From the NCBI RefSeq assembly GCF_031769215.1, contig NW_026781862.1:620001-684000 (forward strand): a stretch of DNA of 64,000 bases, written 5' to 3'. Source of the DNA: Ylistrum balloti (taxonomy: Eukaryota). Shown piece after piece: positions 1 to 64,000 of this stretch. The position numbers and the translations under genes were made by a program. Positions within the stretch are counted from its first letter, which is position 1, and each line of letters opens with the position of its first letter. The notes beneath the pieces were generated by a model. That model ran no database searches. It saw only the letters and a list, made by a program, of their open reading frames with translations, and was not told the DNA's origin.

Positions 1-851
1 AGTAACATATATCCGTCACACTGCTGTACTGTAGTAGTACTGTAACACTGCTGTAATGTAGTAGTACTGTAACACTGCTGTACTGTAGTAGTACTGTTAC
101 ACACTGCTGTACTGTAGTAGTACTGTAACAATGCTGTACTGTAGTAGTACTGTAACACACTGCTGTACTGTAGTAGTACAGTAACACTGCTGTACTGTAG
201 TAGTACTGTAACACACTGCTGTACTGTAGTAGTACAGTAACACTGCTGTACTGTAGTAGTACTGTAACACTGCTGTACTGTAGTAGTACTGTTACACACT
301 GCTGTACTGTAGTAGTACTGTAACAATGCTGTACTGTAGTAGTACTGTAACACACTGCTGTACTGTAGTAGTACTGTAACAATGCTGTACTGTAGTAGTA
401 CTGTAACACACTGCTGTACTGTAGTAGTACTGTAACACACTGCTGTACTGTAGCAGTACTGTAACACTGCTGTACTGTAGTAGTACTGTAACACTGCTGT
501 ACTGTAGTAGTACTGTAACAATGCTGTACTGTAGTAGTACTGTTACACACTGCTGTACTGTAGTAGTGCTGTAACACTGCTGTACTGTAGTAGTACTGTA
601 ACAATGCTGTACTGTAGTAGTACTGTTACACACTGCTGTACTGTAGTAGTGCTGTAACACACTGCTGTACTGTAGTAGTACTGTTACAAACTGCTGTACT
701 GTAGCAGTACTGTAACACTGCTGTACTGTAGTAGTACTGTTACACACTACTGTATTGCAGTAGTACTGTTACACACTGCTGTACTGTAGTAGTACTGTTA
801 CACACTGCTGTACTGTAGTAGTACTGTTACACACTGCTGTACTGTAGTAGT
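1..851. repeat. Tandem array, 29-31 bp unit (ACTGCTGTACTGTAGTAGTACTGTAACAC), about 28 copies, continues past window start
   Basis: Read directly. On the minus strand the unit is the last 7 codons, stop codon and 4 nt of the adjacent TRIM-like CDS. Confidence 0.97.
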
Positions 852-2404
852 TTTACATTGTCATCCTCAAACACTACCCACAGAACATCCTCCCTGTCTA
901 CACCTACTTCCCATGCCCCCAGTGGTTCTGTGTATATGATTCTGAGGAACTCACCACCTCCACTGAGGAGTAGGACCCTACAGTTGCTTAAATCCCCTAT
1001 GATGAGGTTCCCCACACTGTCATACACCACACACCAGGGGTTAAATAGTTCATCTTCTGTTTCTGGTGTTTGTTTATATGCACTGGGGATGTCACCTCTA
1101 TATACAAACAGTTCCTGGAAATCAGCATCCATGACAACAACATGTCTGTCTCCATCACCACTGTCACTTTCATCGTTGAAATCAATCACTGTGACATTGT
1201 GAGTTACTGGACACTCTGCCATCTTGTACAGTGTATGTAGTAATGGTTTCCGTGTCCTTCTGGTCATTGTAGTGAGCACCATTTGACCTTGTGTGGTAAA
1301 TTTCGAGATGTGCTTGTTCATTCCAACAATGATATGGTTACTGGCTGTAACACATATACACCTGGGGAACTCCTTGGTTCTGAATTTGTTTGTAAGTTGT
1401 CCTGATGCCAGTTCCATAATGTTTTTTTTCTCGTCACAGACCCACAGTGTGTGTGTTGTGGGTGATAGACTGATGTAATTGATGACAGCCGTATGTTTGA
1501 CCTCCTGTACTACTTTACCCTCCCTGTTTAAGAGAGTTAATGTATCACTTAAATAGTTACAGGTCCACACCTGACCATCAGTGGTGGGACATACAGACGA
1601 AATGCAACATGGAGATTCCCATTCCTTCATCACTATGGTCTCTAACCATAGTTTTTTACTTGTCACTGCTTTCTTCCCTTTTACTCCTGTTTGTTGTTGT
1701 TTAGAGGATTGCCCCTGTTCATCTGGTGCTGAGACTGACCGATCCTGGTCAATCGATGTTTGACCTGAGGTGGTAACTGTCCCTAAGGCCTGTTGTAGAT
1801 AATGGTGAGGATTTGTGTTAGGTGTGAAGCTGGTTGTACCTAGGACAGGTTTTACAGGGAAATTTAATGAGGGATATATTTCTGTGTCATAGATGTCCAG
1901 GTGAGAACCACGTTGAAGGGTCACCTGACAATCCTGTAATTGTTGTTTCAGCTGTTTGTCGTACATCTCCAGTTCATTTTTGTATTTCTGTATCAGCCTA
2001 GTGTTGTCCTCTTCCATCTGTTTATAAATAGAGAGTGTCTGTGTTGTATGTAGATCGAGTTCATGTTTTAATTTATCTGTTTGAGTTTTTAGTTGGAGTG
2101 AAAGTTTCTCAAAATTACTGGTGTTGTCTTTAAGTAGTATATCAGCAGAGGTGATATATTCCCCGACTTTTACCAGGTCATTTTGTTCTGTTTTTTCAAT
2201 GAAGTTTTCAATATCTTGTTTCTTTTGAGGAGTAATTGCACTGAGCTGACAAACAGGGTGACTTCCGTGAGTTGTCAACATACATGTTAGGCAGATAAGT
2301 TGATCACATTTCTCACAATAAAGATCCAGTTGCCTCCCTTTATGTTCACTACAGGTGGACTGACCTTTTGGATGGAAAAAGGTTTGATTGATAGGTGTTG
2401 CCAT
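827..2404 (-). CDS. RING-less TRIM-like protein (B-box, coiled coil, NHL/SMP-30-like beta-propeller), about 525 aa, single coding exon
   Basis: Open 535-codon ORF. B-box pattern CSEHKGRQLDLYCEKCDQLICLTCMLTTHGSH, then heptad-rich region, then propeller repeats (NPWCVVYDSVGNLIIGD). Acceptor TTTTTGTCCTTTCAG ends at 2423, so the likely start is MATP at 2404, not 2434. Confidence 0.88.
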   Translation of the reverse strand: MATPINQTFFHPKGQSTCSEHKGRQLDLYCEKCDQLICLTCMLTTHGSHPVCQLSAITPQKKQDIENFIEKTEQNDLVKVGEYITSADILLKDNTSNFEKLSLQLKTQTDKLKHELDLHTTQTLSIYKQMEEDNTRLIQKYKNELEMYDKQLKQQLQDCQVTLQRGSHLDIYDTEIYPSLNFPVKPVLGTTSFTPNTNPHHYLQQALGTVTTSGQTSIDQDRSVSAPDEQGQSSKQQQTGVKGKKAVTSKKLWLETIVMKEWESPCCISSVCPTTDGQVWTCNYLSDTLTLLNREGKVVQEVKHTAVINYISLSPTTHTLWVCDEKKNIMELASGQLTNKFRTKEFPRCICVTASNHIIVGMNKHISKFTTQGQMVLTTMTRRTRKPLLHTLYKMAECPVTHNVTVIDFNDESDSGDGDRHVVVMDADFQELFVYRGDIPSAYKQTPETEDELFNPWCVVYDSVGNLIIGDLSNCRVLLLSGGGEFLRIIYTEPLGAWEVGVDREDVLWVVFEDDNVKLLQYSSV

Positions 2405-2620
2405 GATGAAGATCAGAGAAATCTGAAAGGACAAAAATTACTAGTTATATATATTTATAGATGCTGAAATAACAAGAAACTAACACTGTCACAAGATGAT
2501 AAAACACCCCAGAGAGATACTGGTGCTCACCATTGTTTGATATTAATCTGTTATTCAAAAATTTGATTTTTCTCTTCTTGCCTCCATTTCAAATTTTCTC
2601 AAGGTTTAAAAGTTATTTTA

Positions 2621-42979: not shown

Positions 42980-43954
42980 ATGGGGGAGCTTGTCCGGAGA
43001 CTTGATTACGAGCGACGAGCAAGTCACTTATTCAAGAAAGACCCAAAGGCACGATTTTTGACCAAAGAATTCAGTCAACCTGTAAAGTCTGCCAATGCTC
43101 TCGTTCAGAAATCAAAAGTGAAAGCGCTCGCAAATTTGAGAGAGGAAATGAAATATTTTGGGATAAAACATGACCAGGAAAAAGAGAATTTGGAAACTTT
43201 CCGTAAAGGACTTGGTCTGAAATCTGTCAATTTTCAAGAGTCAAGGTTTCAACAAACAAGGTGTAGGTCCTCCATGGTGGTGAAGAGTTCACATGAGTTA
43301 AGCGCTGACCGGATATTGCGTACTGTGCCAAGCAATTACGTCCTCGACTTCGGGCCTGGAAACAGGCCGATTTACACAACAAATGATCCTAAAAAGGTAC
43401 GCCGTACTCTATCCGCCTCGCACAGTCAAGCTTCGAAACCAGAACCACAACAATCTTACAGATCAAAATCGGCATTCTCACGACAATTACCACGGAATAC
43501 AAGTAGAACGCCTTCGTCTGTAAATGACAGATTATCGCAACCAGGTCATAGACAGGGATATCCATTCGCAAAGGAAGACTTACCGGGCTCTCACCATCGA
43601 CAGACAGCCGTCAGGCCCCAAAAGGTGGACACACTCAAGAGGCATTCTTCCTCGTTCTCAGATTCAGACGACGACAGTGTTTTCGAGGAAGAAAGGTTCG
43701 AAGGAGTCATCGAAAATGAAAACGACCCATTTAACAGTAACCAAAAATCATATCGTCATCTCCGTGAAGAATATTCGGTCAAATCAAAAATAATTCCAGA
43801 CACACATAAAGAGAATTTAAAACGGTTGAAAAACATCGAATTATCACATTTGCATGCTTTAGGGGAACGTGTCCACAAATTCACAGCTGGTATCCATGCC
43901 CTTGCTTCAAGAAGGAAATATGCGACGTCAGTAATCTCGCCTCTGAGCCTTTGA
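42980..43954 (+). CDS. Uncharacterised 324-aa protein: N-terminal coiled coil, basic Ser/Arg-rich disordered middle, acidic patch, short C-terminal helix
   Basis: Long non-repetitive ORF in AT-rich DNA. Upstream acceptor TTCTATTTTCAG ends at 42946; AATAAA at 44223-44228. No family recognised. Confidence 0.8.
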   Translation: MGELVRRLDYERRASHLFKKDPKARFLTKEFSQPVKSANALVQKSKVKALANLREEMKYFGIKHDQEKENLETFRKGLGLKSVNFQESRFQQTRCRSSMVVKSSHELSADRILRTVPSNYVLDFGPGNRPIYTTNDPKKVRRTLSASHSQASKPEPQQSYRSKSAFSRQLPRNTSRTPSSVNDRLSQPGHRQGYPFAKEDLPGSHHRQTAVRPQKVDTLKRHSSSFSDSDDDSVFEEERFEGVIENENDPFNSNQKSYRHLREEYSVKSKIIPDTHKENLKRLKNIELSHLHALGERVHKFTAGIHALASRRKYATSVISPLSL

Positions 43955-52931: not shown

Positions 52932-55900
52932 ATGGAACGGTTGAACCTGATAAACAAACGCGGCCCACGTCATCCCGAAGGAGGCTTGAAAATGGCCGTC
53001 CCAGCAGACGTTCTGTCACCCTTTAAGACTGGAATGAAGTCCTACCATCACACGCTTAAGAGAGTTATTAAGTCTCTAAGAGAAGATGATACATCCGCTC
53101 TGGAAAGAGTTTTCTATAACTTTATCATGTCACTGATTGTTACCATAGTATTTTCTAGCATCACGATGACTGCACTTTGTGGCAATTATTTTTTCTTCGC
53201 AAATAGAGGTTAGTTAAAATTAGTGACTTGTTAAATTATACACCTAAATCTTTACTTAATATATATGTAACCCTGGTAAATACTACCAGAAATATACCGC
53301 TCAGCTAGAGAGAACTTCTCTTTGGCTTGATCGGTTGATCATCAGACATGTAGTAGCTGATCAGTATTGCCTACGTATACCAAAATGTATTTTGTAAAGC
53401 TGTCCTTCCTGTACTTTTTTTCCAAAAGTCATGATAAAGTAAAGCATTTCACTATTTTCTTACTAATTAACTTTTTGCATCAGTTTTTCCTGATTACCTG
53501 ATTCATTCATCACACACACACGCACACACGCACGCACGCACGCACACACACGCACACACGCACGCACACACGCACGCACGCACACACACACACATAACAA
53601 AAAATATGTAAAGGATGGGAAAATTTAGGATAAGGGAGAGTTCCACTTTACCTTGGACATAGTAAATATATATGATAGAATAAAGGTTAAACTAGTAGAA
53701 GACTTGAGTGTGAAATTTCCATGACTACACAGTCATCTTTATGGAGAGTACTAGCACTGGTGTACATAGAGTATGAGCTGCTAAGGAATTGACCATCTTT
53801 TTTGGCTGTACTTTAATTTTATGTACACCAAGGTAAAAAATCGTGTGACAAGATGGTAAACAGATTATAGACCGAAAAATTCACAAGATAATAACAATGT
53901 CATAGACCTTGCAAAAAGTGTTCATGATACTAAACAGATCAGGAGTTCATTATACATGGCAGTGTTTGTTTTCACCAACACACCAACTGACAAAGCACAT
54001 GGTATCAGTCGGTGCCGCCTAGAGCAAGACTGGTCATGGTGAAAGAATACCAGTCTCCATATCCAAGACCTCATGGATTTATTAGAATTTGTGCTTACAA
54101 TAACATACTCTGCCTTCCAAAATACTATATATCAGCAATGGTTTGGCACAGCCATGGGCAGCCCAGTGCCTCCAGTTGTGTCCAACTCATTCCTGGAGTA
54201 CTTGAAAGAAGAGGCTATAGTTACAGCTGCTGTAGAATTTGCAAGCCCAGTCTGTTGAAGCAGTATGTTGATGACATATTGGAATTAGTCAAAAAAGGAT
54301 CACAAAAGGATTTAACTAAGCATATCCATACTGTAGATACTACCAACAGCATCAAATTCACATGTAGGGAGGAAATTGATGGCACTACCCCATTCCTGGA
54401 AACCCTTCTAGTAAAGAAAGGTGATAGTACAATCAAAGCATTGATCTATAGGCAAAAGACATGCACTGACCAAAACCTCAATTTCCGATTGCACCACCCC
54501 TTACACCAGAAGTCAGGCATTGTACGAATGTTGCTGAACAGTTAGAGACCGTTGTCGCAGAGGAAAAAGACAAGAAACAAGAACAAAAATCACATCCATG
54601 GCACCATGAAAACATGTGGATACCCTGATTGGGCAATCTAGAAATTTAACTTTTTGATGAAAGCAAGAAGACTTAGAGATGAATCAACAAAGAAAAGAAC
54701 AAATTGAAAGGACAAGAAGTCATACCTTACATCAAAGGATTGTAAGAAACCGTTTAGAGAATTTACCACAAGATATTTCCACAGCCATTTCTAACACACC
54801 CAATGAAAATGTTGCAAGAATGCGTATACAAAATTGGATGCAATAATTGCAATGCATCATATATCAGAGAAACAGGCAGGAGATTAAGGGTACAACTTGA
54901 TGAACATCAGATAAATACAGTATCTCAAGATGGCAAAAAATTCACTAGATTAGAATGGAAATGTTCTCAGTCCGAGATCAATAAATCAGCACTCACAGAT
55001 AATTCAGCAAAAGAATATCATTGACTGGGAAAATCCCAAAACAGTCAACAGAGAAAACAGCTTGGCTACTGGTTTAAGAAGCCATCTTGATACTCCACAG
55101 CAGGTCAGTACTAAACAGAGATGATGGAAGCTACAGACTCTTGCACATCTATCACCAATTGCAAGTGTTAAACAAAGCCTAGCCGAATTAACTGTAGTAC
55201 ATTGTTACCATCTGATGTATTTTTTTTGGTCTTTAATCTGTTAACCATCTTGTCATGCTTTTTTTGACCTTAGTGTACATAGGATTATAGTACAGCCGAA
55301 AATGTTGGTTGATTAATACCATCTCGTACACTACATACATCAGTGCTAGACCTAAATGGTGGTTTTGTGATAATTATTGAATTAGTATACTGCCTAACAC
55401 ATTCAACAAATACATATCAAAGATATCATTGTGATATGATTTCCTAATTACCAGTAATTTGAGAATGCAAAAACGTAATTTTTAATAAGGTAAAGATCAA
55501 ACAGTTATCAACAAAATAATTTTTCTTTAATATTGATGATTGAAATTTGTATTTTAGAACTGCATGTCTGTAGAATTGATTAATGTGAATATCAATCATT
55601 TTAATTTGCACATGAGAACAACAGTACATTGCACAGCTGATAGTTGGCATTGTCCATTTGCAATTGAATCAATAATCAAGAAGTGGAATTTGAAAGACGT
55701 CGGTAAGGCATTCATCTTACTGATAGCAGTACCACAACCGCATGAATAGAAATCTTCTTGGCTTTCTGATCGGAAACTCACCACAGGAAGATAAAGTAGG
55801 AATAAAACAATAGAGTTCTCTACTATGTTTGATTTAAACAAATGCATCACCAGTGCGTTTTATATTCTTTGCGTGTATACTTGTTTATTTTTTATCTACT

Positions 55901-58900
55901 AGGTTTCTTCTTTACTGTAGCATTTGTTTCACCGTTTGTAAATTGCTCATATCCCCAACTAATTTTCTCAAAAAATAACGAATCTTTGAATCTTTGGGTT
56001 TCATAATTATCTTCACACCATTTGGCAACTCCTTGGTTTGTAGCTGACATAGTCACTTTTATTGGCTGTGAAAAGCTAGTTCATAGAGACAGGCATGTAA
56101 ATTGTGCAGCACAGGCCAATATTGATGGTTGATTAATATCAATTTGTAAAAGCAAAAGAGATCTCTCACTTCAGGCACATGATAAACACTATTATATCAC
56201 AATGCATTCAATCTCAGCAAGTGTTGATATCAGTTAAGTTTAAATTGTTCCTTAAAATGCTTGAAAAATCTAAAATGCTTAAAATATTGACAAAACAATT
56301 TTTACAGTGTATTATTTTTTCTCAGTACAATTGTTCCTATTTATTCTGTTTGTCAAATCTGTATTATACAATTATGCAATAAGAAGGTATTATATGTACA
56401 TTTGAAAGTTGGTCCAGTTGGCAATTACAATAACCTTACTTTTAGGGTCACCTGAGACAAAATCTCATGGTGACTTATTCTAATACCCTAAATCTGGCGT
56501 CGTGTGTTGTGCGTCATGCAGTGTGCATCCGTAAACTTTAACACTTTCGACTTCTTTTCAAAAAACCCTTGATCCAAATTCAATATCATTTTGCAGAAAC
56601 CTTCCCTGGCCTAAAATGAACCAAAATTGCGAATGATACAGTCCCCACCTCCCAAGGGCCTGAGAGGCAGGGCCAAAAGTGTCAAAATAACTCACATTTC
56701 AAAAATCATCTTCTCAACACTCAGATATGGTAGAATCAAATACTCTTCATAAATGGAAGCATCTGAAGGTGCTTTCCCAAAATTGTGAATTTAATGGCCC
56801 CAGGGTCTCACGTTTTCCAGTGGGGAGGGTAGTAGTACTTTTCTGTTACAATGAATAAATAAAAGGAAAAAGAAATAAAATCTGTCACAACTGATGTTAA
56901 ACCTAAAATGAATTGATTGTTACCTAAGCAAATACAATTCAAAAACTAAATTTACATAAACAATGACATTGCTTTAAAGAAGGATCTTGATGTATGCAGT
57001 ATTTTTGCAGAATAAAGTTGTCTTGTTCATATTGATCTTGGAGTTATATTAAGAAAATTTGAGCTAGAATATTTTTTAAGATTCAAGTTCACCACTAAAA
57101 GATAATTAATTGATAGTTCTGCGACTTCGGTTTCATATCATATAGAGGAAAAACTTATTACAACTCATAATTTTGCTTATATTACAGAGAACAGTTTTCT
57201 AGTAAAAAAGCTGAATGTTTTGAGTGAAACAGAAACATCTGTCAGATTACAATGGACACAGCCAGAATTAAGAGCTGAAAGGTATGAAGTCAACATCATC
57301 AGTACTGAACTTTACATTGATGAAGCCTTTGAAGTAGATGCATGGACAAAGACCTCTGAAATCCTAGGCCGACTGACCACTGGTGGCCAGTACTTGTTTA
57401 GTGTGACATCATTTGTTACTTATGAAGATGGACAGGAAAGCCCACTAAAATCTGAGGAGATCAAAATCACGATGAGTATGTATCACTGAGCCTTTTTGTA
57501 ACTGCTTTTTGTTGGAGAGGGCGTGTTGTGGCAAGCAAATTTAAATTCATCCTGCTTTATCTTTTTCTGTTCCACATGCTTCACTACACACTTCTGTAGA
57601 TATTGGGCATTTTGCTGTACAGATGGCTGTTGTGTACTCAACATCTTTCAGTCAAAATATCTCTAGTGTATAAGCCACAAAAAATTTGAGCTATCACTTC
57701 TATTGAGTTCTTAAAAGATTTTGAAATAAAGTCTTATAAAAGGTGAATTACTTGTGTAGGAATTTGGTTTGTGATTCCTGGTATAACTGTCTAAAATAAG
57801 AATTCACCATGATCAAGTTTCTATTCTGTGATGCCCTTGGTTCATATATCAACTATGATATACCTCCCAACTTAGCAGTAAAGAGGGTAGACACAGTGTA
57901 TAGATTACGTAACCTGTTTTAAGCCCTGCATGTCTCAAGGGAGTCAACAAAAGTTTGTGTTCAGTGCAAGATATATCATGATTCCCTCAACAGATTTATT
58001 TCATTTTCTCTCCAAATCAGAAGTTACACTTCACTGTCTTCAATTCACAGGGATCATGTATGTGATCTGTAGATAAATTCTAACTGATAGCTAAGCAATA
58101 GCAAATATTCTGTAGCAAGCATGTATGTTACTTGTATAGATTTAAACTATACATGAACATACTATATGTATGTCTAAGTCTGATTGTAAACATTCCTTTT
58201 TTTTCCCCATTTCCAGGACCTTCAGCACCAGGTCCAATAGATAAACACAAGAGTCTTGTTTCCGGAGCACATGTAGAGCTGATTTGGGAGGCATCACCAG
58301 GATATGTAGAGAGTTATAGTGTTGTTTTGAAGGACTGTTACGGAGATGTGGTAACCTCAGTAATGACAGAATCAACACATCTGACCATATCACTTGACAA
58401 GCATAGACTTTCTACAGCTTATGCAGTAGAGATTTGTTCACTCTCACATGGAGAAAAAAGTGAACCTCAAACACATACCCTACGAATGAAAGGTCAGTGT
58501 TGCATTAAGGGGCATGGGGACATATACCAGTATATCCATTTCCTGTCTTTAAGAAATAGATACTTAGTTTATAATTGATCTTATTATATCCTGAACTGTT
58601 TGCAAGGTTTTCATTTCTGTTGAAAAGCATGACCTTGATGATAGAAGTTATTGATGAAAGAAGAGTTCAGGTCATTTCTTCATCTTTTTAAGTTTCAAAA
58701 TGCACAGTTTCGTGATAAATTTGCAGATTCTGATCTGAGCATTCAAGACCTTCTTGTAACAACACAGGACAGTACGTCTGCTACACTTGAGTGGAAACAT
58801 CCAGTATATATACCTGTACAGAGGTATGAAGTTCACAGGTCTCTAGCTCATTCAAGCGAAGTAAATATCATCAAAATTGCAGCAAACAGAATGCAACATT

Positions 58901-61900
58901 TCGTGACAGATCTTATGCCTGGACAAGCCTACAGATTCAAGGTGATATCAGTCCTACCAATGCAGTGTGGAAAAGAGAGAATTGTACAGTCGCAAGATGT
59001 CTCTGTCACAACACGTAAGCTGATGTTTACTATGTATGAACTAAGATATTCCTGAAATGATATTTTTTCGTCCCTTAAATTTGCTGTAACCTGTATATTT
59101 CTCCAAATAATTGACTTCCACACATCTTAAGTAATTACGGTAAATGTGTTGATTTTTAGGTCACCTGAGACAAAGTATCATGGTGACCTATTGGGATCAC
59201 CTTCATCATTGGTTGTACGTTGTACGTCTGTAAACAATTAAACATTTACAACTTCTCAAAAACCCCAGTACCGATTTCAATAAAATTTTGCAAAAATCTT
59301 CCCTGGCCAAAGATTAAACAAAATAGTAAATTATATGGTCCCCACCCAACGGGTAATTTGTTTTTATTAATTTCAATTTTTAAGCATAATTTGTTTAATT
59401 ATTTCCCATTTAAACTTGGTTAGAATAAATCACACAGGATATGATAGTTATGTAATTCACATTTTGAATTTGCTTAGCATTCTGACTTCTTGTTCATCTT
59501 GCATTAGAATTGTGTGCTAACTTTTTTCACTTTTGCAGGTTTTGTACAATACTATGTACATGGGTTCATAACACCAAATTCTTGAATAATATTTTCTGCA
59601 ATAATTCATTTGATATAAAGAACAAAAGCAGAAGAGATGATTTGGCATGTAAAACATGAAAAAAAAATTCAAATAAATGTACTTACTAGACAGGATCAGT
59701 TTGGTTGAGGTAGTCATTGTACAGTGTGTATGTATCGAGACATAAACTTTAAATTTAGAAATTGTATATGTATTAGTTTACGGTTTCTCCTTGTTGATAT
59801 AAGTTTTTGAATTTTCTGCATCCATTTGAACATACCTTATGAAATGACAAATTTATCATAATTACCTTGACGAAGCCCTCTCACAGGCAAAACTTGACAA
59901 CATGTACAAATATTGTAAAACGAACTAAAGCACCGCTAACGGAGGATGTCAGGTTGAGATTGTAGCTCTATGTTTATATGTCTAAGTCATAAGACAATCA
60001 CTTTACATACTTCGAGGTATCCACACAAAGATGATCTAGTACAAAACCGCTAAAAAAAGCATTTGGTCCTAAATTCCCCCCTAGCTAGAAGTTTACTTGT
60101 TGGGGTTTGAGAGATATTGTGTTTGTGTATAATCACCATTGACCAGAGATTGTTAAGGATTACAGGCCAAGTATTGGTCCTAAATTCCCCCCTAGCTAGA
60201 AGTTTACTTGTTGGGGTTTGAGAGATATTGTGTTTGTGTATAATCGCCATTGACCAGAGATTGTTAAGGATTACAGGCCAACTATTGACACTGCACCATC
60301 TGCATGTGATTTTCATTTTGGGTAAAGTTTCACTAGAGGTGTTGGATTGCTTAAGCATATCATAATTTGTTATAGATCTATTTCAGTTTTTAGGGGAAAG
60401 TGTTTAGTCATACTTTGAACTAGGTTTTCATAATTCTAGATTGAATAAATTTCAATGTACTTAGGTCTGTAAGTGTGCACTAGTTCATGTATATTTACCA
60501 TAATTTCCACACATTGAGCTGGCTAAATAAAAATAAGAGTGGAATTATTTTAGCTCTTTATTGCTTGGTGTAAAGTCTGTTAATTATCTATCTATCCATC
60601 TGTTAATCCACATTTCAGGTCATATGACTCGCCATCTTTGCCATCTTAAAAAAAAAATCAATTAAGATTTATCATAATATCCGAAAGGTGAGTTGAAGAG
60701 GAGATGGCCTGGTCGCGAGTTCAAAATGCCAGCTATTGCAACCATTTCGGAACATGGTTGTGCAGCTGTGTGGTTGGACTCATGAAATTTTGCTCACTGT
60801 TGCATGGAATGACATATAAATGGTCCTGCACCATATTACAGGCTTATGAAGCAGTCAGTTTTGGTATCTGTGAAAACTTTCTTGCATCTCGCTGTAACAC
60901 ATTTATGACTGACATTAATATATGATAAAATTGTTGTTTTTACAGGCCCTGCAATGCCAGGTATGGTTGATAGAGAGAAAAGCACCATCAAATCTACATC
61001 AATGGAGTTGATATGGCAAGCTTCAGAGGGTGTTGTGGATAGGTATATTGTTAAAATAGCAAGTGACTCTCCATTTAGAGAAGAATATGAGACAAATACT
61101 CCTTCTGTGGTTATAAAGAATCTAGAAGTAAATACCCGATACCAGTTAGATATCTATGCTGTCAGTGGTGAGGTGATGAGTGAGCACAAAACTGAAGTGT
61201 TGAAAACAAAAGACATAGAAGGTGAGTTCATTTCATATTTTGTTTTCTTCATATAAACGTTAATTCTATAAACACATAGTTCTGTTTGAGAAAACTTCAC
61301 ATCCAATTTGTCTATATTCCATGATGTATGATTGTATGTCACTATTTGTTTTGTTTATCTTAATAAATGTTACGTTACCAATACTTTTGCACCAGACATC
61401 AGCTTAGAATGGGTCGAGATGGGATGTAAACATTTTACCTAAAGTAGACAATGTCTGATAAATAACAGTGTTGGACTTTCCTGGAATGTGCAGCTGTCGG
61501 GTATATGTATCACAAGAATCCTGTGTATGAAAATTCAGCTACACACTTGTAGTAGAAATAAAGTCTTGTACTGCTTGGTCGGAGTTATCATAGTCTTTTA
61601 GACTCGTAGTTGGACAACAAAAAAATGTGCTCACTCTTGTATATCTAGACACTTTGTAAAATGATTAAATTCAATGCCAAAACATTCATGCACCAGTCTT
61701 CAGATCAATCAGGATCAATTTGGACAACAAATTGTTATTCCGTTATTCTGTTATACTTTTTAAGTTTGTGACTTTGACTGTGCAATGTCCTCAGATGGAA
61801 TAGGTCCCAAGTCTGTAGTGTGGTCTTGGAACTAGTTGTAAGACTAAGATTAATCAGATCATCCAATATTGAAATTTATTAATTTTGTTGAATTGTGTGG

Positions 61901-64000
61901 CTACTACACCTCGTCATCTAGTTTTGGACAATTTCTTTTGACCAGTTTCTGTTTTCCTTGGCGATCTCTTAGGTTTGTAAAAAATAGAAGCAGTATGAAG
62001 CAGTCTAGCTCTGAATTATTGAAAAGTGCTGTTCACTTACGTGTTTTTTTTTGAAAAGTGCTGTTCACTTATGTGTCTTTTTAGCCCACCATCATCAGAT
62101 GGTGGGCTATTCAAATCGCCCTGCATCCGTCGTCCGTCCGTCCGTTCGTCCGTAAACAATTCTTGTTACTGCTATTTATGGAAAAGCACTAGATGGATCT
62201 TTCTTAAATTTCATATGCATGTTACCCTCGGTCCCTAGTTATGCAGTATACCTTTTTTGGACTAATTCGAATTCAAGATGGCTGACAGGTGGCCATCTTG
62301 GAGTTTGAAAGTAAAAGTTTGTTACTGCTATTTCTTGGAAAGTACTGGATGGATCTTTCTCAAATTTCATATGCAGTTTCCCCTTGATCCCTAGTTGTGC
62401 ATTGTACCTGTGTTGGACTGATTCGAATTCAAGATGGCTGACAGTCGGCCATCTTGGATTTTGGAAGTAAAAGTTTGTTACCGCCATTTCTTGGAAAGTA
62501 CTGGATGGATCTTTCTCAAATTTCATATGCAGTTTCCCCTTGATCCCTAGTTGTGCATTGTACCTGTGTTGGACTGATTCGAATTCAAGATGGCTGACAG
62601 TCGGCCATCTTGGATTTTGGAAGTAAAAGTTTGTTACCGCCATTTCTTGGGAAGTACTGGATGGATCTTTCTCAAATTCCATATGCAGGTTCCCCTTGTG
62701 CCTTGTCCCTAGTTGTGCATTGTACCTTTTTTGGACAGATGCAAATTCAAGATGGCCGCCAGGCAGCCATCTTGGAGTTTGAAAGTAAAAGGTTGTTACC
62801 GCCATTTCTTGGAAAGTACTGGATGGATCTTTCTCAAATTTCATATGCAGTTTCCCCTTGATCCCTAGTTGTGCATTGTACCTTTTTTGGACTGATTCGA
62901 ATTCAAGATGGCAGACAGGCAGCCATCTTGGATTTTGGAAGTAAAAGTTTGTTACCGCCATTTCTTGGGAAGTACTGGATGGATCTTTCTCAAATTCCAT
63001 ATGCAGGTTCCCCTTGTGCCTTGTCCCTAGTTGTGCATTGTACATTTTTTGGACAGATGCAAATTCAAGATGGCCGCCAGGCAGCCATCTTGGAGTTTGA
63101 AAGTAAAAGGTTGTTACCGCTATTTCTGGGAAAGTACTGGATGGATCTTTCTCAAATTTCATATGCAGTTTCCCCTTGGTCCCTAGTTGTGCATTGTACC
63201 TTTTTTGGACTGATCCGAATTCAAGATGGCCGCTTGTTGGCCTTCTTTTATTTTAAAAAGAAAAATTTGGTACCGCTATTTCTGAGAAAGTACTGGATGG
63301 ATCTTTGTCAGATTTCATAGGTATTGGTTTCCCTTGGTCCCTAGTTGTGCATTGTACCTTTTTTGGACTGATTTGAAATCAAGGTGGCCCACAGGCAGTC
63401 TTCTTGGATGTCGACAGTAATACAGCACTAGCATATTTTCTTCGATATTCTATCATATTGATTCAAGACCATGTCCATTATCCACCTGTAACTGTATCTA
63501 ATAATACTTTGGGATCTTTTTCAAATGATATTTGCTAATAGGTGCTTAATAAAAACATCTTGTGCCATCATTGAGTACATTCAATGAAGACCAGTTCATG
63601 AACATTTACAACACCTGTAACAAAAAAAATAAACAAATCTTCAAGAACTGAAAACAGATCCTCAAATGGTGGGCGCCCAGATCCCTCTGGGATCTCTAGT
63701 TTTTGAAAAGTGCTGTTCACTTATGTGTCTTTTTTTTGAAAAGTGCTGTTCACTTATGTGTCTTCCAGAGAGCCCTGATAAAGGCATAAACATAAGTAAA
63801 TTAACACTATCTTGATATTCCAGTCTCTTGGGGATGCTTAACCATGGCCATGGCTACAGGATCATTAGCTGGGATTGGTGTTGTTTCATTAGCACCTATT
63901 CTTGGAGCTGTAGGATTTGGTGCTGCTGGAATAGGTAAAGGCACTTTGGCAGCAGCATGGATGTCTTCCTATGGTGGAACAGTAGCATCTGGAAGTCTGT
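52932..64000 (+). CDS. Putative TM + 4x fibronectin type III + IFI27/IFI6 (ISG12)-like protein, join(52932..53208,57188..57475,58217..58492,58727..59014,60946..61221,63824..>64000), 3'-partial
   Basis: Four symmetric phase-1 FN3 exons (288/276/288/276 nt) with W, Y and LxxGxxY hallmarks and GT-AG boundaries. The upstream exon has a hydrophobic stretch and a phase-1 donor (AGAG|GTTAGT). The final exon reads LGAVGFGAAGIGKGTLAAAWMSSYGGTVASGSL. FN3 exons are high confidence; the first exon and the fusion are moderate. Confidence 0.72.
53512..53594. repeat. (CA)n/(CACG)n compound microsatellite
   Basis: Read directly. Confidence 0.95.
53940..55150 (+). mobile_element. Decayed Penelope-like retroelement (reverse transcriptase + GIY-YIG endonuclease) in intron 1 of the FN3 gene
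   Basis: Frameshifted motifs LLEFVL..TY..FQ..YQQ.FGTAMGSPV.PVVSN, YVDD, IKFT..E...PFL, TDQNLNF..HHP, GYPDW, CVYKIGCNNCNASYIRETGRRL...EH, KSAL, IDWENPK. Confidence 0.9.
56440..56900 (+). mobile_element. HINE-like repeat fragment (TCACCTGAGAC family)
   Basis: TTTTAGGGTCACCTGAGACAAAATCTCATGGTGACTTATT followed by a GCGTC/GTGC tract. Confidence 0.65.
59155..59450 (+). mobile_element. HINE-like repeat fragment (TCACCTGAGAC family)
   Basis: TTTTTAGGTCACCTGAGACAAAGTATCATGGTGACCTATT; internal similarity to the 56440 copy (CTTCCCTGGCC.AA.AT.AA.CAAAAT). Confidence 0.65.
60063..60291. repeat. 111-bp tandem duplication (2 copies)
   Basis: TTGGTCCTAAATTCCCCCCCTAGCTAG... at 60063 and 60174. Confidence 0.95.
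62020..63768 (+). repeat. Four copies of TTGAAAAGTGCTGTTCACTTA[C/T]GTGT(C), two on each side of the HINE; the last ends in a splice acceptor (TCTTCCAG, 63768)
   Basis: Copies at about 62020, 62051, 63703 and 63736. Confidence 0.9.
62079..63700 (+). mobile_element. Apparently complete HINE/Helentron-type non-autonomous element with an internal 150/156-bp satellite (about 8 units)
   Basis: 5' hairpin AGCCCACCATC-ATCA-GATGGTGGGCT, (CGTC)n tract, central 150/156-bp repeats, 3' subTIR ATGGTGGGCG, palindrome AGATCCC-TCT-GGGATCT, terminal CTAGT. Inserted in a T run without a TSD. Confidence 0.85.
63824..64000 (+). CDS. Exon encoding an interferon alpha-inducible protein 27/IFI6-like (ISG12) domain, runs off window
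   Basis: VSWGCLTMAMATGSLAGIGVVSLAPILGAVGFGAAGIGKGTLAAAWMSSYGGTVASGSL matches the ISG12 pattern GF..AGI..G..AA..MS..GG.V..GSL. In-frame ATG at 63844 (ACCATGG). Absent from the ORF track. Confidence 0.85.

What the first reader, a model, noticed from the sequence alone, without database searches (positions are those of the whole stretch)
52932..64000. Candidate new immune protein architecture: TM + four FN3 domains fused to an IFI27/ISG12 domain
Seen: FN3 exon 4 ends in phase 1 (GAA G|GTGAGT, 61221), and the acceptor at 63823 continues in frame as EVSWGCLTMAMATGSLAGIG...LGAVGFGAAGIGKGTLAAAWMSSYGGTVASGSL. The upstream exon encodes a hydrophobic stretch (VFYNFIMSLIVTIVFSSITMTALC) and joins in phase 1. 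Established: IFI6/IFI27 proteins are small, interferon/dsRNA-induced, hydrophobic membrane proteins affecting apoptosis and viral replication; FN3 arrays are binding or receptor modules. I know of no FN3-ISG12 fusion. Inference: this could be a sensor-effector coupling a ligand-binding FN3 rod to an ISG12 membrane effector in invertebrate antiviral defence. Alternative: the ISG12 ORF is a separate gene starting at ATG 63844.
Basis: partly seen in the sequence, partly recalled or inferred. Interest (0 to 1): 0.85.

Follow-up and report, generated by a model that had tools for sequence, protein, structure and literature searches.

The report
Scallop FN3-array protein ending in ISG12
This scallop gene most likely does join a membrane anchor, four fibronectin-type-III domains and a complete IFI6/IFI27 (ISG12) domain into one protein; other scallops keep the same design under misleading names such as "tenascin-X-like", and its function is untested.

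Summary
Six exons with canonical AG/GT sites, all joining in phase 1, give a 561-aa protein (window 52932 to 64104; the window cuts the last exon at 64000). It has an N-terminal hydrophobic helix, four FN3 domains with one exon each, and a full Ifi-6-16/ISG12 domain on one terminal exon.

The deposited annotation of this scallop genome has exactly this model. RefSeq models in Pecten maximus, Mizuhopecten yessoensis and Argopecten irradians share the architecture, with about 3 to 11 FN3 domains. They are named tenascin-, fibronectin- or myomesin-like, so the ISG12 domain goes unmentioned.

Six intact genomic copies have the same in-phase donor and acceptor. The split codon stays Val through wobble changes. 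Conservation begins at the acceptor, not at the internal ATG. The last intron holds no conserved block, and both flanking exons are under purifying selection. The rival of two separate genes is therefore unlikely, about 0.1.

No transcript read could be examined here, and nothing shows an immune role. I found no paper describing this architecture.

Verdict: a real, lineage-restricted new architecture of a known family, with the sensor-effector idea still speculative.

The parts
52932..53208 (+). Exon 1. N-terminal tail of about 60 aa plus a hydrophobic helix at residues about 62-84, a signal-anchor-like TM. It ends in phase 1. Homologues start at the position of the second Met (52992, MAVP...).
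   Evidence: Kyte-Doolittle peak 2.14; AF2 helix 55-94; homologous N-terminal exons in L003 and hydrophobic N-terminal segments in P0004, P0013 and P0015.
53209..57187 (+). Intron 1 (3979 nt), with a (CA)n microsatellite at 53511-53594 and decayed ORF fragments that look like a mobile element at about 54000-55100.
57188..57475 (+). Exon 2 = FN3 domain 1 (96 codons, phase 1-1).
   Evidence: Pfam fn3 25 bits; AF2 strands 101-187.
58217..58492 (+). Exon 3 = FN3 domain 2 (92 codons, phase 1-1). It has no Pfam hit of its own.
   Evidence: About 30% identity to exon 5; AF2 beta-sandwich 199-278 at pLDDT 70-83; Foldseek alignments of about 385-400 columns to four-FN3 fragments.
58727..59014 (+). Exon 4 = FN3 domain 3 (96 codons, phase 1-1).
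   Evidence: Pfam fn3 37.9 bits.
60946..61221 (+). Exon 5 = FN3 domain 4, the 'last-type' FN3 exon. It ends ...AAA GAC ATA GAA G|GTGAGT in phase 1.
   Evidence: Pfam fn3 38 bits. Orthologous exons with the same phase-1 donor lie upstream of every intact ISG12 exon (a G|GT donor in the five scallop copies, A|GT in L002). dN/dS is 0.16-0.23.
61222..63823 (+). Last intron (2603 nt; 358-3810 nt in the other copies). It contains an inserted repeat element at 62083-63699 (156-nt unit x8), flanked by 32-nt direct repeats at 62019-62082 and 63700-63764. The acceptor is ...gatattccag|.
   Evidence: No block is conserved between species, and the short P. maximus and Logan introns hold no in-phase ATG mini-exon that is conserved.
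63824..64000 (+). Terminal exon encoding the whole ISG12/Ifi-6-16 domain. It is cut by the window end and continues to the TGA at window-equivalent 64104. AATAAA lies at window-equivalent 64379.
   Evidence: Pfam PF06140: 33.6 bits for the window part and 51.1 bits in the full protein. A profile of the domain hits human IFI27L1, PDB 2LOQ, at E 4e-7. L001 sequence. dN/dS is 0.07-0.25.

Best explanation
One gene encodes a 561-aa membrane protein anchored at both ends. It has a short N-terminal tail, a signal-anchor-type TM helix, a rod of four FN3 domains (one symmetric phase-1 exon each), and a complete ISG12/IFI6-16 domain (four Gly/Ala-rich hydrophobic helices) on a single terminal exon spliced in phase to the last FN3 exon. 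It belongs to a family seen in four scallop genomes plus one unidentified Logan contig. The two ends are constant across the family, while the number of FN3 exons varies from about 3 to about 11 by exon duplication and alternative splicing. Shown here: exon structure, domain identities, conservation of the junction, and purifying selection. Inferred, with lower odds of about 0.25: the N-terminus is cytosolic and the FN3 rod faces the lumen or exterior. The rod would act as a binding or spacing module, and the ISG12 helices as the membrane-embedded working part. By analogy with IFI6/IFI27, these helices may self-associate and change ER or mitochondrial membrane behaviour or apoptosis. Engagement or clustering of the rods would then control the ISG12 module.
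For: (1) The 58-aa window piece finds a 561-aa protein that is 100% identical at residues 470-527. This is the deposited model for this very locus and equals my independent splice model. (2) The next best hits are long proteins with the ISG12 domain at the extreme C-terminus. Pfam shows fn3 plus Ifi-6-16 in each: P. maximus XP_033747451 and XP_033731515/6, M. yessoensis XP_021346320, and A. irradians XP_069135166-172, where all six isoforms end in ISG12. (3) All six intact genomic copies from five sources share the junction. The FN3-last exon ends in a phase-1 donor (G|GT in the five scallop copies, A|GT in L002), the intron is 358-3810 nt, and the acceptor is TTYCAG|T. The split codon reads GTC, GTA or GTT (Val, wobble only; ATC in L002). 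It is followed by x-W-G-C upstream of any Met. (4) In alignment A1, invariant columns make up 5% of the intron, 83% of the acceptor, 43% of exon nt 1-14, 47% of the rest of the CDS (53/68/9 by codon position) and 7% of the 3'UTR. (5) In the window copy the Met kept by the others at codon 5 is Leu. (6) dS is 0.8 to above 2 with dN/dS 0.07-0.25 for the ISG12 exon and 0.16-0.23 for the FN3-last exon. The two A. irradians copies duplicated as a unit. (7) The last introns share no conserved block. A 1.5-kb Logan contig carries the FN3 exon and the ISG12 exon 388 nt apart, in phase. (8) AF2 gives four beta-sandwiches at pLDDT 70-85, and Foldseek's best matches are four-FN3 fragments of LAR and fibronectin. 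(9) For topology, K+R is weakly richer on the N-side of TM1, and N-x-S/T sequons are nearly absent (0-1 observed against 1.5-5 expected per protein). (10) For an immune link in invertebrates, shrimp IFI6-16 is induced by poly(I:C) and WSSV and is protective (PMC9144789), and a clam IFI27 responds to PAMPs (PMC7430831).
Against: No transcript or junction read could be examined. The gene models may borrow from one another through protein-homology evidence, so the four annotations are not fully independent. An in-frame ATG in strong Kozak context (ACCATGG, 63844) and a Met kept near the exon start in the other copies leave room for an additional stand-alone ISG12 transcript from an internal promoter. 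The ISG12 part of the AF2 model has pLDDT below 35, so helix packing and topology are not established. There is no ISRE-like motif within about 2 kb upstream of exon 1. Nothing ties this gene to infection. FN3 exon evolution shows constraint, not diversifying selection.
Confidence: 0.8

Rival explanations
1. Two adjacent genes. A TM+FN3 gene ends after exon 5, for example by intronic polyadenylation, and a small stand-alone ISG12 gene of about 85 aa starts at ATG 63844. The fused models would then be annotation or read-through artefacts.
For: ACCATGG Kozak context at 63844. A Met lies near the start of the exon in every copy. Typical ISG12 proteins are about 90-160 aa (P0008, P0010, P0011; PMC9144789). 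AATAAA at 61362 follows a short read-through ORF after exon 5. One P. maximus model (P0014) ends in an intron read-through without ISG12.
Against: Coding-type conservation begins at the acceptor, 14-20 nt upstream of the Met, including wobble-only change in the split Val codon. The phase-1 donor and acceptor match in 6 of 6 copies. The gaps are only 358 and 388 nt in P. maximus and the Logan contig, with no conserved promoter or exon block. The Met at codon 5 is Leu in the window copy. All RefSeq isoforms in three species end in ISG12. The only 'stand-alone' close relative, P0007, proved to be the terminal exon called on a short genomic contig that also carries the FN3 exon.
Confidence: 0.1
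2. The fusion is real but has nothing to do with antiviral or immune defence. The ISG12 module serves only as a multi-helix membrane anchor for a structural FN3 spacer or adhesion protein, for example setting a luminal or intercellular distance. 'ISG12' would be a vertebrate-centred name for an old membrane domain.
For: PF06140 occurs in plants, oomycetes and other organisms without interferon. Both exons show plain purifying selection. There is no promoter ISRE-like site. Rod length varies by whole FN3 units, as expected of a spacer.
Against: Invertebrate ISG12-family genes that have been tested respond to poly(I:C), virus or PAMPs (PMC9144789, PMC7430831). Lineage-specific expansion and copy turnover, with tandem copies and a decayed exon in A. 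irradians, is more usual for defence genes. Neither point concerns this gene itself.
Confidence: 0.35
3. The window copy is a decaying or non-functional copy, with its last intron disrupted by a 1.6-kb repeat insertion.
For: Inserted element at 62083-63699 in the last intron. A frameshifted ISG12 exon exists in A. irradians (L006 from 58238), so copies do decay.
Against: All six exons are intact with canonical splice sites and an open 561-codon frame. dN/dS against the orthologues is 0.15-0.25. The insertion lies more than 120 nt from the acceptor.
Confidence: 0.04

Closest known systems
ISG12 / IFI6-16 family (FAM14; Pfam PF06140): human IFI6, IFI27, IFI27L1 (NMR structure PDB 2LOQ), IFI27L2; shrimp LvIFI6-16
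   Same: The complete domain is present: 51 bits against a 29 cut-off, and a profile E of 4e-7 to IFI27L1 over the whole domain. It has the same Gly/Ala-rich hydrophobic helices and invariant motifs (LG..GF...G...G..AA.W...Q...G), and it sits at the C-terminus as in the stand-alone proteins.
   Different: Known members are small proteins of about 90-160 aa, with at most a signal peptide or TM ahead of the domain. Here about 470 residues precede it (tail, TM helix, four FN3 domains). Inducibility and localisation are unknown.
Tenascin-X / fibronectin / myomesin (the names RefSeq gives the homologues)
   Same: Tandem FN3 domains. The best structural matches are four-FN3 fragments of fibronectin and LAR.
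   Different: No EGF repeats, fibrinogen globe, FN1/FN2 modules or Ig domains (Pfam). The protein is membrane-anchored at both ends rather than secreted or sarcomeric. The names are artefacts of FN3 similarity.
FN3-ectodomain receptors (cytokine receptors gp130/IL6ST, RPTPs such as LAR, Eph receptors)
   Same: An FN3 rod attached to a membrane segment, and the idea that rod engagement is passed to a membrane or cytoplasmic module.
   Different: Those are type I proteins, with a cleaved signal peptide, one TM after the FN3 domains, and a kinase, phosphatase or box-motif tail. This protein has an N-terminal signal-anchor and a multi-helix ISG12 domain with no cytoplasmic catalytic domain.

Membership tests
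ISG12 / IFI6-16 (Pfam PF06140, FAM14) | Sequence match to the family profile above the curated cut-off | tested here: met
   PF06140 scores 33.6 bits for the window part and 51.1 bits in the full protein at residues 485-556, profile positions 6-82 of 84. The cut-off is 29.1.
ISG12 / IFI6-16 (Pfam PF06140, FAM14) | Homology to an experimentally studied member over the whole domain | tested here: met
   A profile of eight domains (A3) hits human IFI27L1, PDB 2LOQ, at E 4.2e-7, profile positions 11-91 against chain residues 21-103. The single sequence gives E 0.009.
ISG12 / IFI6-16 (Pfam PF06140, FAM14) | Small stand-alone hydrophobic protein (about 90-160 aa) with no other globular domain | tested here: not met
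   The protein is 561 aa, with four FN3 domains ahead of the ISG12 domain.
ISG12 / IFI6-16 (Pfam PF06140, FAM14) | Several hydrophobic, Gly/Ala-rich membrane helices | tested here: inconclusive
   Kyte-Doolittle windows of at least 1.4 at 471-507 and 521-561. AF2 helices at 471-491, 500-517, 526-533 and 541-560, but at pLDDT below 35.
ISG12 / IFI6-16 (Pfam PF06140, FAM14) | Induction by interferon, dsRNA or virus | not testable with these tools
   No expression data could be reached. There is no ISRE-like site within about 2 kb upstream of exon 1.
FN3 domain array (Pfam PF00041) | Profile match and seven-strand beta-sandwich fold for each repeat | tested here: met
   fn3 hits for exons 2, 4 and 5. 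Exon 3 is supported by about 30% identity to exon 5 and by the AF2 fold. Foldseek E is 2.5e-20 to LAR FN1-4 (6tpw) and 2e-19 to fibronectin Fn7B89 (3t1w).
Tenascin | EGF-like repeats and a C-terminal fibrinogen-like globe besides FN3 | tested here: not met
   Pfam on P0001-P0005 shows only FN3-type families and Ifi-6-16.
Type I FN3 receptors (cytokine receptor / RPTP type) | N-terminal cleaved signal peptide, a single TM after the FN3 domains, and a cytoplasmic signalling domain | tested here: not met
   The hydrophobic segment starts about 60 residues from the N-terminus. The C-terminal part is ISG12 only, with no kinase or phosphatase domain.

The most novel reading that the evidence does not exclude
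FN3-ISG12 proteins are ISG12 effectors gated by an ectodomain. Binding or crowding of the FN3 rods on the lumenal or outer face drives assembly of the glycine-zipper-like ISG12 helices, which then alters membrane permeability or curvature or triggers apoptosis. This would be the first case of an ISG12 domain wired to a recognisable input module. It would give a handle on the still unclear biochemical activity of IFI6/IFI27. A variant of the idea is that the rod, anchored at both ends and 4 to 11 FN3 domains long, spans and sets a lumenal distance.
Probability: 0.15. Interest if true: 0.8.

Novelty: new variant of a known kind. Interest (0 to 1): 0.5.

Why it matters
The molecular action of ISG12-family proteins (IFI6, IFI27) is still poorly defined, partly because they are tiny, featureless membrane proteins. 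A conserved natural fusion to a folded, soluble FN3 rod says which side of the membrane the domain works with. It offers a partner-finding handle, since recombinant FN3 rods could be used for pull-downs. It also shows that the domain tolerates about 470 residues ahead of it. For scallop genomics it corrects a set of misnamed genes ('tenascin-X-like', 'fibronectin-like', 'myomesin-3-like'). It also gives a candidate lineage-specific membrane or defence family to test in challenge experiments.

Tried and rejected
- Word-indexed protein searches with sub-regions of the protein (residues 375-561 and 470-561) returned nothing. I could therefore find neither transcript-derived fragments spanning the junction nor close stand-alone ISG12 proteins.
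- Exact look-ups of P0002 and P0005 were not on record. I used P0013, P0014 and P0016 instead.
- ESM Atlas searches showed no large cluster combining fn3 and Ifi-6-16. The only mixed cluster was Ifi-6-16 plus Annexin.
- Six paper searches found nothing on an FN3-ISG12 architecture or on the homologues' accession numbers or names. The Parker and Porter family paper is not held.
- An ISRE-like motif scan found 10 sites in the window against 1.65 expected. None lies in the approximately 2 kb upstream of exon 1, and one lies inside FN3 exon 2. It was not used as evidence.
- My first pairwise-identity script used a gap scheme that gave meaningless baselines. I discarded it in favour of the MAFFT alignment and invariant-column counts.
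- Pfam on the intron-1 ORF fragments gave no hit.
- P0007 was considered as a genuine stand-alone paralogue and rejected. Its contig also carries the FN3 exon, in phase.
- P0006 (4736 aa, 24% identity over 37 residues) was treated as a compositional hit and not pursued.


Full report
**What is in the sequence.** The window is AT-rich eukaryotic DNA, about 35% GC. Other notes of this scan call the genome a scallop. The contig is JAUZWB010001297.1 of GCA_031769215.1. I re-derived the gene from the raw sequence.
- The exons are 52932-53208, 57188-57475, 58217-58492, 58727-59014, 60946-61221 and 63824 onward.
- Every internal boundary is AG...GT. Exon lengths are 277, 288, 276, 288 and 276 nt, so every junction is in phase 1.
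- The spliced frame is open for 527 codons up to the window end.

**Domain identities.**
- Pfam finds fn3 in exons 2, 4 and 5, and Ifi-6-16 (PF06140) in the last exon.
- Exon 3 has no Pfam hit but is about 30% identical to exon 5.
- An AlphaFold2 model built on nine family members shows a long helix at 55-94. It then shows four beta-sandwiches (101-187, 199-278, 287-375, 384-463) at pLDDT 70-85. Four low-confidence helices follow at 471-560.
- Foldseek's best PDB matches are four-FN3 fragments: LAR FN1-4 (6tpw), and fibronectin Fn7B89 and FN7-10 (3t1w, 1fnf). The alignments run to about 385-400 columns.
- A profile of the C-terminal domain hits the NMR structure of human IFI27L1 (2LOQ) at E 4e-7 over the whole domain.
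- Hydropathy peaks lie at about 59-88 and in the ISG12 region.

- The top hit, P0001, is 561 aa and 100% identical at residues 470-527. It is the deposited model for this very locus.
- L001 is identical to the window over 11069 bases. The model equals my splice model plus 34 more residues and a TGA at window-equivalent 64104.
- The next hits are also long proteins with the ISG12 domain at the extreme C-terminus. They are P0002 (390 aa), P0003 (707 aa), P0004 (638 aa) and P0005 (1104 aa). Pfam shows fn3 plus Ifi-6-16 in each.
- These are RefSeq models from Pecten maximus, Mizuhopecten yessoensis and Argopecten irradians. They are named tenascin-X-like, tenascin-like, fibronectin-like or myomesin-3-like.
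- All twelve ISG12-bearing models and isoforms listed end in the same ISG12 domain. The full-length ones also have an N-terminal hydrophobic segment.
- From my own knowledge, NCBI's Gnomon reports several isoforms only when transcript alignments support them. I could not see that evidence here.

**Is it one gene? Comparative gene structure.** This evidence is independent of the models. I fetched the loci and located every FN3-last exon and ISG12 exon.
- There are six intact copies: the window, M. yessoensis, P. maximus, two in A. irradians, and one 1.5-kb Logan genomic contig of unknown species.
- In all six, the FN3 exon ends in a phase-1 donor (...AAR GAY ATH NAR G|GT in the five scallop copies, ...ATT AAA A|GT in L002). 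The intron is 358-3810 nt and the acceptor is TTYCAG|T.
- The split codon reads GTC, GTA or GTT, which is Val with only wobble change (ATC in the Logan copy). It is followed by x-W-G-C before any Met.
- In a six-way alignment running from -150 nt to the 3'UTR, invariant columns make up the following shares:
  - 5% of the intron
  - 83% of the acceptor hexamer
  - 43% of the 14 exon bases upstream of the conserved Met position
  - 47% of the remaining CDS, distributed 53/68/9 over codon positions
  - 7% after the stop
- Coding constraint therefore begins at the acceptor, not at the ATG.
- The Met that the other copies keep at codon 5 is Leu in the window copy.
- The last introns share no block between species. 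The 388-nt Logan intron has no ATG-initiated mini-exon with an in-phase G|GT donor. The 358-nt P. maximus intron has candidate donors in one short ORF, but none is conserved.
- P0007, the 87-aa 'stand-alone' ISG12 hit, is the terminal exon called on the Logan contig. That contig also carries the FN3 exon 388 nt upstream, in phase.
- Between species dS is 0.8 to above 2, while dN/dS is 0.07-0.25 for the ISG12 exon and 0.16-0.23 for the FN3-last exon. The two A. irradians copies differ equally little in both exons, so the pair duplicated as a unit.
- Together these results make the two-gene rival unlikely. I put it at about 0.1, mainly because no transcript read could be examined.

**What kind of protein it is.**
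- It has a cytosolic-looking tail of about 60 residues and a signal-anchor-type helix. A rod of FN3 domains follows, with an ISG12 domain as the second membrane attachment.
- The FN3 exons are all symmetric in phase 1 and alternate between two types of 96 and 92 codons. This explains how family members range from about 3 to about 11 FN3 domains while keeping both ends.
- K+R residues are slightly enriched on the N-side of the first helix.
- N-glycosylation sequons are almost absent, with 0-1 observed against 1.5-5 expected per protein. The proteins are related, so these are not independent trials.
- Both points weakly suggest that the N-terminus is inside and the rod is non-cytosolic. I treat this as inference.

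**How it may work.** What is known of the family comes from small stand-alone proteins.
- From general knowledge, IFI6 is an ER or mitochondrial membrane protein that affects apoptosis and flavivirus replication organelles, and IFI27 acts at mitochondria or the nuclear envelope.
- Among invertebrates, shrimp IFI6-16 is induced by poly(I:C) and WSSV and is protective (PMC9144789). [quoted passage not shown] Oysters carry many IFI27 transcripts (PMC4892480).
- By analogy, the ISG12 helices are the membrane-active part, and the FN3 rod is a binding or spacing module that could control their assembly.
- Nothing here tests this. There is no ISRE-like site near the promoter, no sign of diversifying selection, and no expression data.
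- A purely structural, non-immune role is a serious alternative, which I put at about 0.35.

**Novelty.** The proteins already sit in public databases, but under FN3-derived names. None of my paper searches found any description of an FN3-ISG12 architecture. No large ESM Atlas cluster combines the two families. It fails one customary feature of the ISG12 family, being a small stand-alone protein, while meeting the sequence-defined ones. I therefore file it as a new variant (architecture) of a known kind, seen so far only in four scallop genomes plus one unidentified Logan contig.

**Limits.**
- No junction reads or cDNA were available.
- The four annotations may share protein-homology evidence.
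- The ISG12 part of the structure model is unreliable.
- The species of the Logan contig is unknown.
- The taxonomic range outside scallops was not tested, because the length-restricted searches returned nothing.

Noticed in passing
window 62019-63764: A 1.6-kb insertion at 62083-63699 in the last intron. It starts with a palindromic AGCCCACCATC..GATGGTGGGC and ends with a hairpin plus CTCTAG. It carries eight copies of a 156-nt satellite-like unit and is flanked on each side by two copies of a 32-nt direct repeat (TTGAAAAGTGCTGTTCACTTAYGTGTCTTTTT). From memory it resembles the non-autonomous Helentron-type elements that carry ~160-bp satellites in bivalves. This was not tested.
   Followed up: partly
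window 54000-55100: Decayed ORF fragments in intron 1, including a 177-aa ORF at 54012-54545 and a ...YKIGCNNCNASYIRETGRRL...EH stretch. From memory the stretch looks like the GIY-YIG endonuclease motif of Penelope-like retroelements. Pfam found nothing significant.
   Followed up: partly
window 827-2434 (-): A single 535-aa ORF with a B-box zinc finger (E 2e-9) and an NHL repeat, making it a TRIM-NHL-like intronless gene or retrocopy.
   Followed up: no
window 42980-43954 (+): A 324-aa single-exon ORF that the genome annotation calls a gene (L001 49-1023). It has no Pfam family.
   Followed up: no
window, whole: The ISRE-like pattern GAAANNGAAAS occurs 10 times against 1.65 expected from shuffles. 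None lies within about 2 kb upstream of the FN3-ISG12 gene. The excess may only reflect A-rich low-complexity sequence.
   Followed up: no
L006 58238-58527 (A. irradians): A third ISG12 exon with the same acceptor, but frameshifted after five codons. It is a decayed copy lying between two intact FN3-ISG12 units inside one 84-kb RefSeq gene model.
   Followed up: partly
L003 (M. yessoensis) and L005 (P. maximus): Gene-model problems in the homologues. The 65.8-kb M. yessoensis model contains two N-terminal exons (6001, 65642) and two FN3-last exons, so it probably merges two tandem copies. In P. maximus the adjacent models P0014 (TM+FN3, ending in an intron read-through) and P0002 (FN3+ISG12, no TM) look like one gene split in two. 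Compare the complete P0013 on an unplaced scaffold, which has the same DnaJ neighbour.
   Followed up: partly
P0001, P0004, P0005, P0015 (whole proteins): N-x-S/T glycosylation sequons are almost completely absent from the FN3 rods, with 0 observed where 2.3-5 are expected per protein. This is unusual for an extracellular FN3 array and unexplained.
   Followed up: partly
window 60063-60287 and 53511-53594: A 111-nt unit repeated twice at 98% identity in intron 4, and a (CA)n-type microsatellite in intron 1.
   Followed up: no
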